Origin: Selaginella moellendorffii
Taxonomy: Eukaryota; Plantae; Lycopodiophyta
NCBI RefSeq assembly: GCF_000143415.4
Contig: NW_003314271.1
Location: 2,950,186-3,014,185, forward strand
Direction of reading: 5' to 3'
Length of the DNA stretch: 64,000 nucleotides
Position 1 is the stretch's first letter. Each line of letters starts with the position of its first letter. The notes beneath the pieces are model-generated. The model saw only the letters and a program-made list of their open reading frames with translations, ran no database searches and was not told the DNA's origin. The translations under genes and the position numbers were made by a program. Positions 38,883-43,280 of the stretch are shown here, piece by piece.

Positions 38883-40175
38883 CTAGAAATATCCCTGAGT
38901 ACAGTTGCCAAGGTGAGTGACCAAGCTCTGGGCGTGCTCCTTGCGCACATTGATGAGCACCTCTGTGATCCCGTCCTTGCGCGGTGGCCCAATCGTGAAC
39001 GCCCCCTCAATCCCCATATTCACAGTGGAGAACCGGAATGGATTGCCAAACCCAAAGTCAACCTCATATAATGGAAACTTCGACCAGCACGGGATCATGA
39101 CATTTGGGATCCAGCTCTGGTCCTTGGCCTCGGCCTGTGGCGGCTGGGCATCTTCACTCGCTTGCTCCAGCGCCAGGTAGTCGATCACCGACTCGAGGAA
39201 CACACGGTTGCTGGCGCGCTTGACGCCCTGCCGGATGAGCCCCGCGGCGTGCTCCAGCGATCCATCCAGCAGATCCGCGGCGCTCGTCTGGACAAAAGTG
39301 AGGTAAATGGCGTTACCAAAAAACCCGCTCGGGGCATTGAGGATGGAACGACCATTGGCGGGACAAAAATGCCCGACCAGAGTGCTCCGGTCTTCGAAGT
39401 CCCTGGCCGCGGTCATGCACCTCCAGAAGTGCGCACTCAGCGTTTCGTAGGTGGTGTATTTGTTCCCGCAGAGAGATTTGAGGTGGGAGATCTGCTTGCT
39501 CGTCAGGTTTGCCGTGAGAGTGAGGACCTCTTGCCCCGGGACGGTGGTGCGCGACATTTGCTTGTGGATGAACTTCACTAGTGGATCCTCCACGACCGGG
39601 GGATTTCTGGGAAACAAGAAATATCGGTCGTGGATGAGCGGGACGAATCCTGGAGTGAGGGATCCGGTTCTTGCAGCAGATGCCCAGTTGAGCAAGAACT
39701 GCGCGTGGGCGGAGCCATCGCACACGCGGTGGTGTCCCTCCCAGCTGAGGGCCAGCCCCCCGCAAGCGAAGCGCGTCACCTGGATGATGAGCGGCACGCG
39801 GTTCATCCCATCGCCGAGCTCCAGCGTCGACGAGCCGACGAGATCCTTGACGTCGTTGCCGCGCTTGTCCAGGAAGGGAGCCAGCTCGGAGGAGCACACC
39901 GCCTCGACGAAGATCGCGCCTTCGTTGTTGAGATGGATGCAGTGGCGGCCCAGCTCGTCGCGCCCGATCCGGCCGGCGAGCTCCGGGTAGTGATCCAGCA
40001 CGGTTGCGAGCCCCGATTCGATGCGCGCCGCCGCCCCGGCGGGGGCGTTCTCGTAGAAGAGGATGATGGGCATCTGGCTGGTGTGGAAGAGGTCGAGCGG
40101 CGAGAGGAGCACCACGCGTGGGACGGAGGCGGGGACGTCGGACTTGGCCACGCACATCCGCGAGTGGATCTCCAT
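38883..40175 (-). CDS. BAHD acyltransferase (copy 2), intronless
   Basis: Nearly identical protein to copy 1 (HRVCDG, DFGFG), inverted, with a 6-aa longer C-terminus (CTQGYF). Confidence 0.95.
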   Translation of the reverse strand: MEIHSRMCVAKSDVPASVPRVVLLSPLDLFHTSQMPIILFYENAPAGAAARIESGLATVLDHYPELAGRIGRDELGRHCIHLNNEGAIFVEAVCSSELAPFLDKRGNDVKDLVGSSTLELGDGMNRVPLIIQVTRFACGGLALSWEGHHRVCDGSAHAQFLLNWASAARTGSLTPGFVPLIHDRYFLFPRNPPVVEDPLVKFIHKQMSRTTVPGQEVLTLTANLTSKQISHLKSLCGNKYTTYETLSAHFWRCMTAARDFEDRSTLVGHFCPANGRSILNAPSGFFGNAIYLTFVQTSAADLLDGSLEHAAGLIRQGVKRASNRVFLESVIDYLALEQASEDAQPPQAEAKDQSWIPNVMIPCWSKFPLYEVDFGFGNPFRFSTVNMGIEGAFTIGPPRKDGITEVLINVRKEHAQSLVTHLGNCTQGYF

Positions 40176-40519
40176 CGCCAAGAGGAAGAAACTAACGCAA
40201 AGAAGAAGAACGAATCGCTCTCCTCAATTATACGATTTTTATCTTCCACAATGTTCGGAAAGATTCGCCTGACACGCCTGCCTTTAGCGTGGAGGAAGCG
40301 AGATCGCTCATTTTCCCCAGCCATGAATCTCTCGTCACGTCGACGTATTCGTGTCCGACTATAGCCTCGATTGGGATAGCTTACAACTTGGTCCTCTGGT
40401 GTCGCAAAACTTTCCCGTGGCAGCCAGGTAGTCAGATAGAAAAACCAAATCCCTGAGATTCATATTCGTGTCATGGTGTCCACTATCCTTCTTCGAAAAT
40501 CGCCCCATCACACATGGCT

Positions 40520-40860: not shown

Positions 40861-41105
40861 AAGGAACATTGGGGATATGATACACATCCTCCTCTTCCTA
40901 ACAAATTATTCATTTGTGATCTTGCAAAATAATGGAACACGGACTTTTGGAAGAAAAATGACTTCACCTTTTGACTTCCGCGTCGGAGAATGAGCACTAG
41001 CAGTCACCCTTGACTTCAGCAAAAGCGATGATGATTGATGTGGCTGATAAAAGAAACAAATTTGACACTGGGATCACAAGTCACTTCACTCGGTTGCAAG
41101 GGAGA

Positions 41106-43280
41106 ATGTTGCGCACAATTCTCGTGCTTCTGTCACTGGCAGCTGCAAAAGGAGAAGATCGTGCAACGCTCTTGCGCTTCAAGAACCAGGTGAGCGATCC
41201 ATTATCCACACTCAGTACCTGGAACACGAGTTCTGGCGTAGATTCGTGTCACTGGCATGGAGTCAATTGCTCCAGCTCGGGCCGGATCACTGGACTTGAT
41301 CTTCAGTCACTATCACTGCCCAGGCCTGCTTTGCTCGATGCGATCCAAGACCTGTCCCATCTAGAGGAGCTCCACATCTCCCAGACCAATTTCACCGGAT
41401 CGTCCACCAATCGTTCGCTGCGAAGTTGCAACCTGGAAGCTCTCGACTTGTCTCAAAACAAGCTCACTGGCGATGATAATCTTCTGCTTCAGATCCTCGA
41501 GAGCTGCGGCGGGACGATCAGAGCTCTCAACCTTTCTTCCAACGAGCTCACTCGCGATGATATGCTGTCGTTGCCCCTCTTCTCCCGGGAGAGGTCTTGC
41601 AACTTGACGGTCTTGGACGTCTCAAACAACCGGCTCGTCGGCGAGTTTCCTCCCAGGATCCTCTCCACTTGCGTTGAACTTCAAAAGGTCTTCCTGTCCA
41701 GCAACAATCTCTCTCAGATCTTTTTCCCCGGCTGCAAAAACCTGATTAGTATCAACATCTCGTTCAACCAGATATCGGGAGAGTTATTCGCTCCCGAAAG
41801 CAGATGTACCTCACTGAAAGTTCTCGCTATCGCTCGCAACGCCTTCTCCGGGGATTTCTTCTCGCTGTTTGGAGCAAGCCAGCGCTCGCACAACTCCAGC
41901 TCGAGCAGCTTCTTTCCCGTCGTTGAGAGGATCGATGCCGCCTACAACAAATTCACGGGTGAGGTTCCAGCGCATATTGGAGTGCTCACGAGGTACATGG
42001 ATCTCAGCTCCAACAATCTCACCACCATAGGAAACCAGCAGCTTTGCAGCTCCAACTCAAGCCTGGAAAGTTTGCTCCTACAGAACAATCGCCTGGATGG
42101 TGAGCACAATGTGTTTGGCTCCCTCCAAAGGTGTGCTAGTTTGAAGATGCTGGACGTGAGCTTCAACACGCTTGCCGGAGAACTCCCCAGCAGCCTATGC
42201 CAAAACCATCCACAGCTCAGGCACCTGATCCTCTGGGCGAATAGCTTCGAAGGACAAATACCATCCGCTTTGGCCAAATGCAAAAACCTCGTCAACTTGA
42301 TGCTGAGTTTCAATCGTTTCGAGGGAGAGATTCCATCACAGCTCTCCGACCTGCAAGACCTGCAATGGTTGAGCTTGAGCAACAACAGGCTTAGTGGTGA
42401 GATACCTGCTGCGCTGGGACGCCTCCACAGGATGACCGTACTCCAGCTAAGAGACAATCGCCTGCAAGGAGAGATTCCATCAGAGCTCGAGCAGTGCGAG
42501 AATTTGCTGATGATAGACTTTGCCGGCAACTTGCTGAGTGGAAATATCCCTGCTCGCATCGGCAAAAGTTCGAGTAGCCTCCTGACACTGGTACCTCGAG
42601 TAGAGAGAAACTTGGGAGAGTTGAGGTACGTGACACCGGCGCTGGCTCTTCCAACCTGCACTGGAGCGAGTGGAGTTTTTGGAGTCCAGGGAATTGCACT
42701 GGAGGATTTTGAAGCATTGCTTGCCGCGAGAACCAGGTGTGATGCTCACGTCGGTTTCTTTCCCCCGGTTACTCTCGATCTCAGCAGCCCCATTTACTTG
42801 GACGTCTCGAACAACAACCTCACTGGAGAGATACCGCTCGAACTTGGCAGGATGGAGGATCTTATAGTCCTTGGTCTCGCCTACAATTCTCTCACAGGAG
42901 AAATCCCGGCAGGCTTTGGAACCATCCCGACTCTGGACACGGTTGACATGTCGCACAATCTCCTCCAAGGTGGCATTCCGGGCGGCTTTGCGAGTCTCGG
43001 CACTCTCACCCGGCTCAACGTCTCGTATAACAACCTGTCTGGAATCGTTCCCCAGGGCCCCCAGACTGGAACTTTTATCCTCGATGGAAATCCCCGCCTG
43101 TGCAACCATCTCGAGGTCCCGGGCTGTGCCGCCCCGGTTGATGCCACGCCACAAAGTTTTTCACGGGGTGGCGACGATGGCTTCGGCGGCATCGTTGGGA
43201 TGGGAGTTGCTCTTGGAGTCGTCGCATTTGTACCCAGCGCCATTCTGTCCTTCAGGTATTTATCGCCACTGTTCTTCTAG
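41106..43280 (+). CDS. LRR receptor-like protein (no kinase) with BRI1/BRL-type island domain, intronless
   Basis: Signal peptide from ATG 41106, LRRNT cap (WN..CHWHGVNC), many plant LRRs, an island of about 70 aa, four further LRRs, GNPRLC cap, GxxxG-rich TM, then stop after a very short tail. Confidence 0.9.
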   Translation: MLRTILVLLSLAAAKGEDRATLLRFKNQVSDPLSTLSTWNTSSGVDSCHWHGVNCSSSGRITGLDLQSLSLPRPALLDAIQDLSHLEELHISQTNFTGSSTNRSLRSCNLEALDLSQNKLTGDDNLLLQILESCGGTIRALNLSSNELTRDDMLSLPLFSRERSCNLTVLDVSNNRLVGEFPPRILSTCVELQKVFLSSNNLSQIFFPGCKNLISINISFNQISGELFAPESRCTSLKVLAIARNAFSGDFFSLFGASQRSHNSSSSSFFPVVERIDAAYNKFTGEVPAHIGVLTRYMDLSSNNLTTIGNQQLCSSNSSLESLLLQNNRLDGEHNVFGSLQRCASLKMLDVSFNTLAGELPSSLCQNHPQLRHLILWANSFEGQIPSALAKCKNLVNLMLSFNRFEGEIPSQLSDLQDLQWLSLSNNRLSGEIPAALGRLHRMTVLQLRDNRLQGEIPSELEQCENLLMIDFAGNLLSGNIPARIGKSSSSLLTLVPRVERNLGELRYVTPALALPTCTGASGVFGVQGIALEDFEALLAARTRCDAHVGFFPPVTLDLSSPIYLDVSNNNLTGEIPLELGRMEDLIVLGLAYNSLTGEIPAGFGTIPTLDTVDMSHNLLQGGIPGGFASLGTLTRLNVSYNNLSGIVPQGPQTGTFILDGNPRLCNHLEVPGCAAPVDATPQSFSRGGDDGFGGIVGMGVALGVVAFVPSAILSFRYLSPLFF

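What the first reader, a model, noticed from the sequence alone, without database searches (positions are those of the whole stretch)
42560..42830. BRI1/BRL-like steroid-binding island domain in a kinase-less receptor-like protein
Seen: island GELRYVTPALALPT-CTGASGVFGVQGIALEDFEALLAARTR-C-DAHVGFF...SPIYLDVSNNNLTGEIP, four LRRs before the TM, and a stop right after the TM with no kinase downstream. Known: BRI1/BRL islands have the pattern C-x-GAG-x-L-x-EF-x-GI-x2-E-x-L...C followed by SM(I/M)(Y/F)LD(I/M)SYN in the same position, and canonical BRI1 kinases are regarded as missing from lycophytes. Inference: an ancestral or derived small-molecule-sensing ectodomain that would need a co-receptor kinase (GxxxG-rich TM, SOBIR1/SERK-type). 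Relevant to the origin of plant steroid perception.
Basis: partly seen in the sequence, partly recalled or inferred. Interest (0 to 1): 0.75.

Follow-up and report, generated by a model that had tools for sequence, protein, structure and literature searches.

The report
Kinase-less BRI1-like receptor in Selaginella
This spikemoss (Selaginella moellendorffii) gene encodes an intact cell-surface protein whose outer part descends from the plant steroid-receptor (BRI1/BRL) family, but it has no kinase and lacks the residues that family needs to hold the steroid, so it is probably a co-receptor-dependent sensor for some other signal.

Summary
Window 41106-43280 (+) is one uninterrupted 724-codon ORF. 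It encodes a signal peptide, LRRNT cap, about 17 LRRs, a 76-residue island with two cysteines, four LRRs, a cysteine cap, one TM helix and an 8-residue tail. No kinase-like sequence exists anywhere in the 64 kb.

It is S. moellendorffii SELMODRAFT_409609, 97% identical to RefSeq "BRI1-like 3".

In an ML tree the gene and eight kinase-less Selaginella paralogues form one clade (100/98). That clade is sister to seed-plant BRI1+BRL1/3+BRL2 (joint clade 99/98), and the grouping survives removal of the island columns.

The island's Cys-to-Cys core matches the BRI1/BRL island only profile-to-profile (P 4e-5). Pfam's Island model and my own island HMM do not detect it.

Pocket residues invariant in 75 BRI1/BRLs are replaced: Trp564 by Met/Val (polymorphic between alleles), Tyr642 by His, and Lys/Arg601 by Pro.

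The gene is under purifying selection (dN/dS 0.33). A frameshifted tandem copy on the other haplotype drifts (0.84).

So the ancestry claim holds and the steroid-binding claim does not. Signalling through SERK/SOBIR1-type partners is plausible but only inferred.

The scan has already reported this family on at least 14 other pieces of this genome, with the same reading.

The parts
41106..43280 (+). Complete single-exon CDS, 724 codons plus stop. RefSeq-style models start 75 nt upstream, at the ATG at 41031.
   Evidence: ORF list and translation. It is 100% identical to SELMODRAFT_409609 over the parts that model keeps and 97% identical to RefSeq 'BRI1-like 3'.
41106..41279 (+). Signal peptide (residues 1-16) and LRRNT cap with Cys48/Cys55 (residues 17-58).
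   Evidence: Pfam LRRNT_2 at residues 17-56, E 4e-10; sequence.
41280..42563 (+). About 17 LRRs before the island (residues 59-486). They include the BRI1-typical 'LILWAN..EGQIP' and 'LQWLSLSNNRLSGEIP' repeats.
   Evidence: Pfam LRR_1/LRR_8, motif scan, alignment A2.
42510..42512 (+). Codon for Met469, the position of BRI1 Trp564 (the LRR-core residue essential for brassinolide binding).
   Evidence: The A2 column is W in 75 of 75 BRI1/BRLs; here it is M, with V in the other allele and T in paralogue P0006. W564H is null in BRI1 (PMC13481262).
42564..42791 (+). Island domain (residues 487-562) with Cys518 and Cys545. The core motif is C-x-G-A-x-G-x-F-x-V-Q-G-I-x-L-E.
   Evidence: hhalign of the island-only profiles against BRI1/BRL gives P 3.9e-5 over 33 columns. 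There is no Pfam Island hit.
42792..43076 (+). Four LRRs after the island (the 'C3' region, residues 563-657). A Q-T-G-T (QxxT) loop sits in the last repeat.
   Evidence: Motif scan and A2/A3 alignments. The QxxT/S loop is described as a SERK-contact feature in PMC10834447.
43077..43175 (+). C-terminal cysteine cap (Cys666/Cys674) and outer juxtamembrane stretch. Net charge of the last 20 residues is -2.
   Evidence: family comparison: BRI1/BRL +1 to +4; the Selaginella paralogues scored 0 to -8.
43176..43247 (+). Transmembrane helix (residues 691-714) with two GxxxG motifs.
   Evidence: Sequence.
43248..43280 (+). Eight to ten-residue cytoplasmic tail and TAG stop. An AG|GT at 43254-43257 is a possible but unused splice donor.
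   Evidence: the RefSeq models end with the same tail. No kinase exon lies downstream.

Best explanation
The gene encodes a functional, secreted-pathway, single-pass membrane LRR receptor-like protein. Its ectodomain descends from the same lineage as the BRI1/BRL brassinosteroid receptors. It belongs to a Selaginella-specific family of at least six kinase-less loci.

Shown:
- the domain architecture;
- the absence of a kinase;
- the sister position to seed-plant BRI1/BRL;
- homology of the island core;
- loss of the invariant steroid-pocket residues;
- purifying selection on the intact alleles.

Inferred:
- It binds a ligand other than the classical brassinosteroids on the island/LRR surface.
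- Having no kinase, it signals by ligand-dependent recruitment of a SERK co-receptor through its last four LRRs (QxxT loop).
- It makes use of an adaptor kinase of the SOBIR1 type through its GxxxG transmembrane helix and acidic juxtamembrane stretch, as angiosperm ID+4LRR receptor-like proteins do.
For: Architecture and no kinase.

All nine paralogous proteins stop 5-20 residues after a TM helix.

Lineage:
- The colinear single-stretch phmmer score of residues 300-690 is 177-227 bits for all island-bearing BRI1/BRLs, against 146 and 122 for the best ID+4LRR RLPs.
- In the ML tree the Selaginella clade has support 100/98. It is sister to BRI1+BRL1/3+BRL2 (99/97), and the joint clade has 99/98.
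- The same topology appears at 97-98 SH-aLRT with the island columns removed.
- The top 22 Foldseek hits are BRI1/BRL3/BRL1/BRL2 at TMq 0.77-0.82, against PSKR1 at 0.37-0.46. This holds with both MSAs.

Island core homology: hhalign P 3.9e-5, against 0.39 for RLP islands.

Not a classical BR pocket: read with PMC13481262.

Selection:
- dN/dS is 0.33 against the allele P0001 (21 nonsynonymous, 20 synonymous; binomial p 5e-4).
- dN/dS is 0.84 against the frameshifted tandem copy.

RLP-type features:
- eJM charge of -2 here and down to -8 in paralogues, against +1 to +4 in BRI1/BRL;
- two GxxxG motifs;
- a QxxT loop.
These are interpreted with PMC10834447.
Against:
- No PSKR, PSY1R, EMS1, NILR1, fern or bryophyte BRL sequences could be put in the tree.
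- The island is predicted with only moderate confidence (pLDDT 44-79) with the BRI1-containing MSA and poorly (29-58) with the Selaginella-only MSA, so its fold is not independently established.
- The Yx8KG/Kx5Y lysine motifs typical of RLP islands are absent, by my own reading of the island sequence printed.
- GxxxG motifs are found only in this subgroup of the family.
- Binding to SERK or SOBIR1 was not tested.
- dN/dS rests on 41 differences.
Confidence: 0.6

Rival explanations
1. One reading: a steroid (brassinosteroid or precursor) sensing ectodomain that passes the signal on through a co-receptor kinase. This would explain how Selaginella responds to brassinosteroids without BRI1.
For: - It is of BRI1/BRL ectodomain lineage and has a homologous island core.
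- Selaginella elongates on BR treatment yet has no BRI1/BRL kinase (PMC3862569).
- The BR pocket is structurally plastic, and BRL2 still binds BRs despite pocket changes (PMC13481262).
- Gly644, Phe658 (as Tyr) and Ile682 (as Val) are kept.
Against: - Trp564 is W in 75 of 75 BRI1/BRLs and W564H is null. Here it is Met, it is polymorphic M/V between alleles, and it is T/V/L/M in paralogues.
- Tyr642 (75/75) is His, Lys/Arg601 (75/75) is Pro, and Gly613 and Leu615 (75/75) are changed.
- The Y-G-G-H-T-S loop is replaced and is 4 residues shorter.
- The Pfam Island profile and my own island HMM fail.
Confidence: 0.08
2. A non-signalling decoy or negative regulator. The kinase-less ectodomain would sequester a ligand or SERK co-receptors, in the way BIR-type pseudokinase receptors or truncated receptors dampen signalling.
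For: - There is no kinase and only an 8-residue tail.
- The SERK-contact QxxT loop and C3 region are conserved.
- Purifying selection is strongest on the island and C3 region, with dN/dS 0.11-0.17, though on very few changes.
Against: - No cognate kinase-bearing BRL exists in S. moellendorffii to be antagonised: none appeared among the top hits, and the literature agrees.
- The acidic eJM and GxxxG TM are features tied to adaptor-kinase recruitment, not to decoys (PMC10834447).
- A family of six or more diverged paralogues fits varied ligand recognition better than a single titration role.
Confidence: 0.2
3. A decaying remnant of a former BRL receptor kinase that lost its kinase and now has no function.
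For: - The family shows copy-number variation.
- There is a frameshifted tandem copy on the other haplotype (1-nt deletion at CDS position 488, dN/dS 0.84).
- The pocket residues are lost.
Against: - The ORF is intact over 724 codons in both haplotypes.
- dN/dS is 0.33, significantly below neutrality (p 5e-4).
- Paralogues only 36-40% identical all keep the same architecture, the island QGI motif and the second Cys.
Confidence: 0.07

Closest known systems
BRI1 / BRL1 / BRL2 / BRL3 brassinosteroid receptor kinases (LRR-RLK subgroup Xb)
   Same: - Colinear ectodomain at 36-41% identity over the last 390 residues.
- An island of about 70-76 residues with two cysteines placed before the last four LRRs.
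- A shared C..G.A....QGI..E island core.
- BRI1-typical LRR motifs and a QxxT loop.
- Sister position in the tree.
- Best structural matches in the PDB.
   Different: - No kinase, with a tail of 8 residues.
- About 21 LRRs instead of 25 (BRI1); BRL2 also has 21.
- The invariant pocket residues Trp564, Tyr642, Lys/Arg601, Gly613 and Leu615 are replaced.
- The island is not recognised by Pfam PF20141.
- The outer juxtamembrane stretch is acidic rather than basic, and the TM helix has GxxxG motifs.
BRL-like LRR receptor-like proteins noted by Ngou et al. 2024 (PMC10834447)
   Same: Kinase-less proteins whose ectodomains fall with BRI1/BRL; their function is unknown.
   Different: Those are described as highly similar to BRL1/BRL3 and as keeping the BR-binding residues. 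The Selaginella family branches outside all seed-plant BRI1/BRLs, lacks those residues, and is not mentioned in that paper's main text (zero occurrences of 'Selaginella').
ID+4LRR receptor-like proteins of angiosperms (RLP23, RXEG1, EIX2, Cf-type) that work with SOBIR1 and SERKs
   Same: Island followed by four LRRs, QxxT/S loop, acidic outer juxtamembrane stretch, GxxxG transmembrane helix, short tail, tandem duplication and presence/absence variation.
   Different: - They fall in separate clades in the tree.
- Their islands are unrelated (hhalign P 0.39).
- This island has no Yx8KG or Kx5Y lysine motif.
PSKR1 (phytosulfokine receptor, LRR-RLK Xb)
   Same: Island followed by four LRRs, and a SERK-dependent C3 region.
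   Different: Only the post-island LRRs align, and TMq is 0.37-0.46 against 0.77-0.82 for BRI1. From my own knowledge, the PSKR1 island is about half as long.

Membership tests
BRI1/BRL receptor kinase family | Cytoplasmic Ser/Thr kinase domain after the TM helix | tested here: not met
   The stop comes 8-10 residues after the TM helix. tblastn with six C-terminal (kinase) pieces finds nothing in 64 kb. There is no kinase Pfam domain in this protein or any paralogue.
BRI1/BRL receptor kinase family | Ectodomain groups with BRI1/BRL in a phylogeny | tested here: met
   The Selaginella clade is sister to seed-plant BRI1+BRL1/3+BRL2, with the joint clade at 99/98 and at 97 without the island columns. 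PSKR, EMS1, NILR1 and non-seed-plant BRLs were not available for the tree.
BRI1/BRL receptor kinase family | Island of about 70 residues with a conserved Cys pair, inserted before the last four LRRs | tested here: met
   The island is residues 487-562. Cys518 and Cys545 align with BRI1 Cys609 and Cys635, and four LRRs follow.
BRI1/BRL receptor kinase family | Island recognised by the curated family profile (Pfam PF20141) | tested here: not met
   No hit at E<=10, while the control BRI1 (P0026) scores 111 bits. My own HMM of 79 islands gives 6.2 bits, E 0.12. Island-only phmmer gives 2 bits or less.
BRI1/BRL receptor kinase family | Island homologous at profile level | tested here: met
   hhalign of the Selaginella island profile against the BRI1/BRL island profile gives P 3.9e-5, probability 70%, over 33 Cys-to-Cys columns. 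Against RLP islands it gives P 0.39. Support is moderate, not strong.
BRI1/BRL receptor kinase family | Conserved brassinosteroid pocket (Trp564, Tyr/Phe599, Lys/Arg601, Leu615, Tyr642, Gly644) | tested here: not met
   The corresponding residues are M469, V509 (a Tyr lies one residue earlier), P511, V524 and H548. Only G550 is kept. All six columns are invariant (599 and 601 within their residue class) in 75 BRI1/BRLs.
BRI1/BRL receptor kinase family | Binds brassinosteroids | not testable with these tools
   This needs a binding assay with the purified ectodomain.
ID+4LRR receptor-like proteins (SOBIR1/SERK-dependent class) | No kinase, single TM helix, short tail, island followed by four LRRs | tested here: met
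ID+4LRR receptor-like proteins (SOBIR1/SERK-dependent class) | Acidic outer juxtamembrane stretch, GxxxG in the TM helix, and a QxxT/S loop in the last LRR | tested here: met
   Net charge -2, two GxxxG motifs and a Q-T-G-T loop. The charge is weak here and strong (-4 to -8) in paralogues P0387-P0389.
ID+4LRR receptor-like proteins (SOBIR1/SERK-dependent class) | Yx8KG or Kx5Y lysine motif in the island (over 75% of RLP islands) | tested here: not met
   The island has a single Lys (K487), with no Tyr six residues on, and no KG nine residues after Tyr508. This is my reading of the sequence; the motif definition is from PMC10834447.
ID+4LRR receptor-like proteins (SOBIR1/SERK-dependent class) | Groups with RLP ectodomains in a phylogeny | tested here: not met
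   Eleven RLPs form clades outside the BRI1/BRL+Selaginella clade.
ID+4LRR receptor-like proteins (SOBIR1/SERK-dependent class) | Constitutive SOBIR1 association and ligand-induced SERK recruitment | not testable with these tools
PSKR/PSY1R, EMS1, NILR1 (other LRR-RLK Xb) | Ectodomain and island closest to one of these | tested here: inconclusive
   PSKR1 is excluded by PDB sequence and fold comparison. EMS1, NILR1 and PSY1R could not be fetched. RefSeq's own names for the family (BRI1, BRI1-like 2, BRI1-like 3) suggest that BRI1/BRLs are its best named matches.

The most novel reading that the evidence does not exclude
This family is the missing brassinosteroid (or other sterol or small-molecule) perception module of lycophytes. 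The BRI1-lineage island ectodomain would work without its own kinase, through SERK/SOBIR1-type partners. It would represent either the pre-kinase or a kinase-shedding state of plant steroid receptors, and would explain why Selaginella responds to brassinosteroids without BRI1.
Probability: 0.07. Interest if true: 0.9.

Novelty: new variant of a known kind. Interest (0 to 1): 0.48.

Why it matters
Several papers state that Selaginella has no BRI1/BRL homologue (PMC3862569, PMC9223546, PMC6744412). Those surveys appear to have looked for receptor kinases. PMC4926431 states that it required a predicted kinase domain; for the three papers above this is my inference.

The genome in fact holds a family of kinase-less proteins whose ectodomains are the sister group of all seed-plant BRI1/BRLs. 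This matters in three ways.

- It changes the taxon sampling for any reconstruction of how the steroid-binding island arose.
- It supplies obvious candidates to test for the unexplained brassinosteroid response of Selaginella, even though the sequence evidence makes classical binding unlikely.

Tried and rejected
No expression or 3'-end data were obtained and no other route was tried.
- Exhaustive representative search. The 150 best hits were swamped by giant multi-LRR proteins with summed repeat scores. This gave no useful relatives beyond P0003.
- Region-limited word search. Ranking was again driven by repeat summation, so it served only as a source of RLP and outgroup sequences.
- P0335 (Diphasiastrum) and P0370 (Marchantia) were checked as possible PSKR-like references. 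They turned out to be TDR/PXY-like and were used as outgroups.
- Island-only phmmer and island HMM. No significant match to BRI1/BRL.
- AlphaFold with a Selaginella-only alignment, as a control for MSA bias. The island came out at pLDDT 29-58, so the island fold has no independent support. The LRR scaffold still matches BRI1/BRL best.
- A spliced kinase. Rejected at the genome level.
- No complex prediction was sent, because no Selaginella SERK/SOBIR1 sequence was in hand and binding is only inferred.
- Two script calls returned no answer and were repeated.
Full report
**What is there**

The + strand ORF 41010..43280 reads, from the Met at 41106, as a 724-residue protein. Its parts are:
- signal peptide, residues 1-16;
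- LRRNT cap with Cys48/Cys55 (Pfam LRRNT_2);
- about 17 LRRs;
- a non-LRR island, residues 487-562 (window 42564-42791), with Cys518 and Cys545;
- four more LRRs, starting at residues 563, 586, 610 and 634;
- a Cys666/Cys674 cap;
- a transmembrane helix, residues 691-714;
- an 8-residue tail and a TAG stop at 43278-43280.

tblastn with the C-terminal 380 residues of six BRI1/BRL/LRR-XII proteins found nothing kinase-like in the 64 kb. An AG|GT at 43254-43257 could in principle be a splice donor. However, the RefSeq models end with the same tail. The next gene on the other haplotype lies on the opposite strand and has no kinase domain.

**Identity of the locus**

The protein is identical to S. 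moellendorffii SELMODRAFT_409609 where that older model is not gapped. It is 97% identical to RefSeq 'receptor-like protein kinase BRI1-like 3', 749 aa.

The RefSeq protein lies on the other haplotype scaffold, GL377594.1, fetched as L001. There the locus is tandemly duplicated:
- Copy B (L001 15237-17546) is intact.
- Copy A has a 1-nt deletion at CDS position 488, which the annotated model P0003 skips with an intron.

The window haplotype carries a single copy.

**Is it BRI1/BRL-like?**

Against PDB sequences, BRL3, BRL1, BRI1 and BRL2 align colinearly through the island in one stretch (query 315-675, 207 bits for BRL3). PSKR1 and the RLP RXEG1 align only after the island.

Single-stretch scores for residues 300-690 were compared:
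- every island-bearing BRI1/BRL fetched: 177-227 bits;
- the best two ID+4LRR RLPs: 146 and 122 bits.

I built an ML tree (IQ-TREE, LG+C20+F+G4 by PMSF, 57 rows, 399 columns). It contained 29 BRI1/BRL1/3/BRL2 sequences, 11 ID+4LRR RLPs and 8 LRR-XI/XII and other kinases as outgroup. The result:
- The window protein and eight Selaginella paralogue proteins form one clade (100/98).
- That clade is sister to the seed-plant BRI1/BRL clade (99/97).
- The joint clade has support 99/98.

With the island columns removed (322 LRR-only columns, quick LG+G4) the same three groupings keep 97-98 SH-aLRT.

Rows left out of the tree:
- Six proteins for which no cap-anchored segment was found: P0387, P0391, P0411, P0056, P0427 and P0280.
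- Two more, P0039 and P0075, which also dropped out at that step.

No PSKR, PSY1R, EMS1, NILR1, fern or bryophyte BRL could be fetched. The tree therefore excludes the RLPs and the LRR-XI/XII groups, but not those families. For PSKR1 the PDB sequence and fold comparisons serve instead.

**The island itself**

On its own the island is too diverged for ordinary searches:
- Pfam PF20141 'Island' gives no hit at E<=10, while a control BRI1 scores 111 bits.
- Island-only phmmer finds only the Selaginella paralogues (P0006 at E 1.7e-4). It gives 2 bits or less for BRI1/BRL islands, although always at the right place.
- My HMM of 79 BRI1/BRL islands gives 6.2 bits, E 0.12.

Profile against profile, the picture is different. 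The Selaginella island alignment matches the BRI1/BRL island alignment over 33 Cys-to-Cys columns with P 3.9e-5 (probability 70%). Against RLP islands it gives P 0.39.

Across the whole Selaginella family the Q-G-I triplet, the following Leu and the second Cys are invariant. Paralogue P0388 is visibly closer to the BRI1 wording.

**Structure**

An AlphaFold model of residues 300-690 built with 75 BRI1/BRLs in the alignment has pLDDT 83, with the island at 44-79. Its 22 best PDB matches are BRI1, BRL3, BRL1 and BRL2 (TMq 0.77-0.82, about 3 A). PSKR1 gives 0.37-0.46. That model is biased by its alignment.

A control with only the nine Selaginella sequences leaves the island at pLDDT 29-58. The LRR scaffold in that control still matches BRI1/BRL first. 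Foldseek also uses sequence.

The island fold is therefore not independently established.

**Steroid pocket**

I mapped the residues tested in PMC13481262 onto alignment A2 through a Brassicaceae BRI1. The table compares each AtBRI1 residue with the column content in 75 BRI1/BRLs and with this gene.

| AtBRI1 residue | In 75 BRI1/BRLs | In this gene |
|---|---|---|
| Trp564 (W564H cuts binding ~100-fold and phenocopies the null) | W in 75/75 | Met469; Val in the other allele; Thr, Val, Leu or Met in paralogues |
| Tyr642 | Y in 75/75 | His548 |
| Lys/Arg601 | K or R in 75/75 | Pro511 |
| Tyr/Phe599 | Y or F in 75/75 | Val509, with a Tyr one residue earlier |
| Gly613 | G in 75/75 | Ser522 |
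| Leu615 | L in 75/75 | Val524 |

The Y-G-G-H-T-S loop is replaced and is four residues shorter.

Residues that are kept:
- both Cys;
- Gly611, Gly620, Ile621 and Gly644;
- Ser662;
- hydrophobic residues at positions 657/658 and 681/682.

This is a conserved scaffold with a remodelled pocket.

**Is it functional?**

Against the intact allele there are 21 nonsynonymous and 20 synonymous differences. This gives dN/dS 0.33, with binomial p 5e-4 against neutrality.

Nineteen of the 21 replacements lie before the island. The island and the C3 region carry one each.

Against the frameshifted copy A, dN/dS is 0.84. This is the pattern expected for a live gene beside a dead duplicate.

**The family**

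Searches with this protein and with P0006 return only S. moellendorffii proteins as close relatives. The proteins are:
- P0001, P0002 and P0003;
- P0006 and P0033;
- P0384;
- P0385 and P0386;
- P0387;
- P0388, P0389 and P0390.

They are 34-40% identical to this protein outside its own subgroup. None has a kinase domain. All complete ones end 5-20 residues after a TM helix.

No kinase-bearing Selaginella BRL appeared.

**Likely mode of action (inferred)**

The last LRR carries a Q-x-x-T loop. The outer juxtamembrane stretch is acidic: -2 here, 0 to -8 in the paralogues scored, against +1 to +4 in six BRI1/BRLs. The TM helix has two GxxxG motifs.

Ngou et al. (PMC10834447) link these features as follows:
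- the QxxT/S loop to SERK recruitment;
- the acidic stretch plus GxxxG to SOBIR1 association in ID+4LRR RLPs.

They report SERK and SOBIR1 in embryophytes.

I therefore favour a ligand-binding RLP that signals through such partners, with a ligand other than classical brassinosteroids. Tandem duplication, copy-number difference between haplotypes, a dead copy and deep paralogue divergence resemble the dynamics of RLP-type sensors more than those of a conserved hormone receptor. None of this was tested biochemically.

**Literature**

- Cheon 2013 (PMC3862569), Zheng 2022 (PMC9223546) and Zheng 2019 (PMC6744412) state that Selaginella or lycophytes lack BRI1/BRL.
- Peng 2016 (PMC4926431) states that islands exist only in seed plants.
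- Ngou 2024 describes BRL-like LRR-RLPs as a category. Those are highly similar to BRL1/3 and retain the BR-binding residues. The word Selaginella does not occur in its main text.
- I found no paper in the searchable library that describes this Selaginella family. Subscription-only papers, for example Wang and Mao 2014 and Furumizu and Sawa 2021 (both seen here only as cited references), could not be read.

**Earlier notes of this scan**

The scan has reported kinase-less BRI1-like genes on at least 14 other pieces of this genome, with the same reading. I reached the ancestry and pocket conclusions from my own tests on this locus. Statements in those notes that other paralogues are transcribed were not checked here.

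**Verdict**

- The BRI1/BRL ancestry is supported.
- The 'steroid-binding' claim is not supported.
- Co-receptor dependence is plausible but inferred.

This is a new variant of a known kind, of moderate interest.

Noticed in passing
L001:10893-13066 (other haplotype, GL377594.1), corresponding to window 41106-43280: The other haplotype carries a tandem duplicate of this gene about 4.9 kb upstream of the intact allele. That duplicate has a 1-nt deletion at CDS position 488 and dN/dS 0.84. RefSeq model P0003 hides the frameshift behind an intron. The window haplotype has only one copy.
   Followed up: yes
window 38883-40181 (-): An intact 432-aa BAHD-type acyltransferase (Pfam Transferase, E 8e-50) lies directly upstream. 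On the other haplotype the neighbourhood holds two such transferases and a UDP-glycosyltransferase, a small cluster of the specialised-metabolism type.
   Followed up: partly
window 40250-40364 (+): The first exon of RefSeq model P0003 corresponds to sequence about 750 nt upstream of this gene's start, inside a long spurious ORF. This suggests that some upstream exons in the annotated models of this family are artefacts.
   Followed up: no
P0335 (Diphasiastrum complanatum) and P0370 (Marchantia paleacea): These are TDR/PXY-like LRR receptor kinases of a lycophyte and a liverwort. Their kinase domains score best against the BRI1 kinase among solved structures (about 227-230 bits).
   Followed up: no
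P0447, P0456, P0461, P0473 (Macadamia, Rehmannia, Durio, Theobroma): Angiosperm BRL3/BRI1-like proteins of 834-913 aa have a Pfam Island domain but no kinase domain on record. They may be the BRL-like RLPs of Ngou et al. 2024, or truncated gene models.
   Followed up: no
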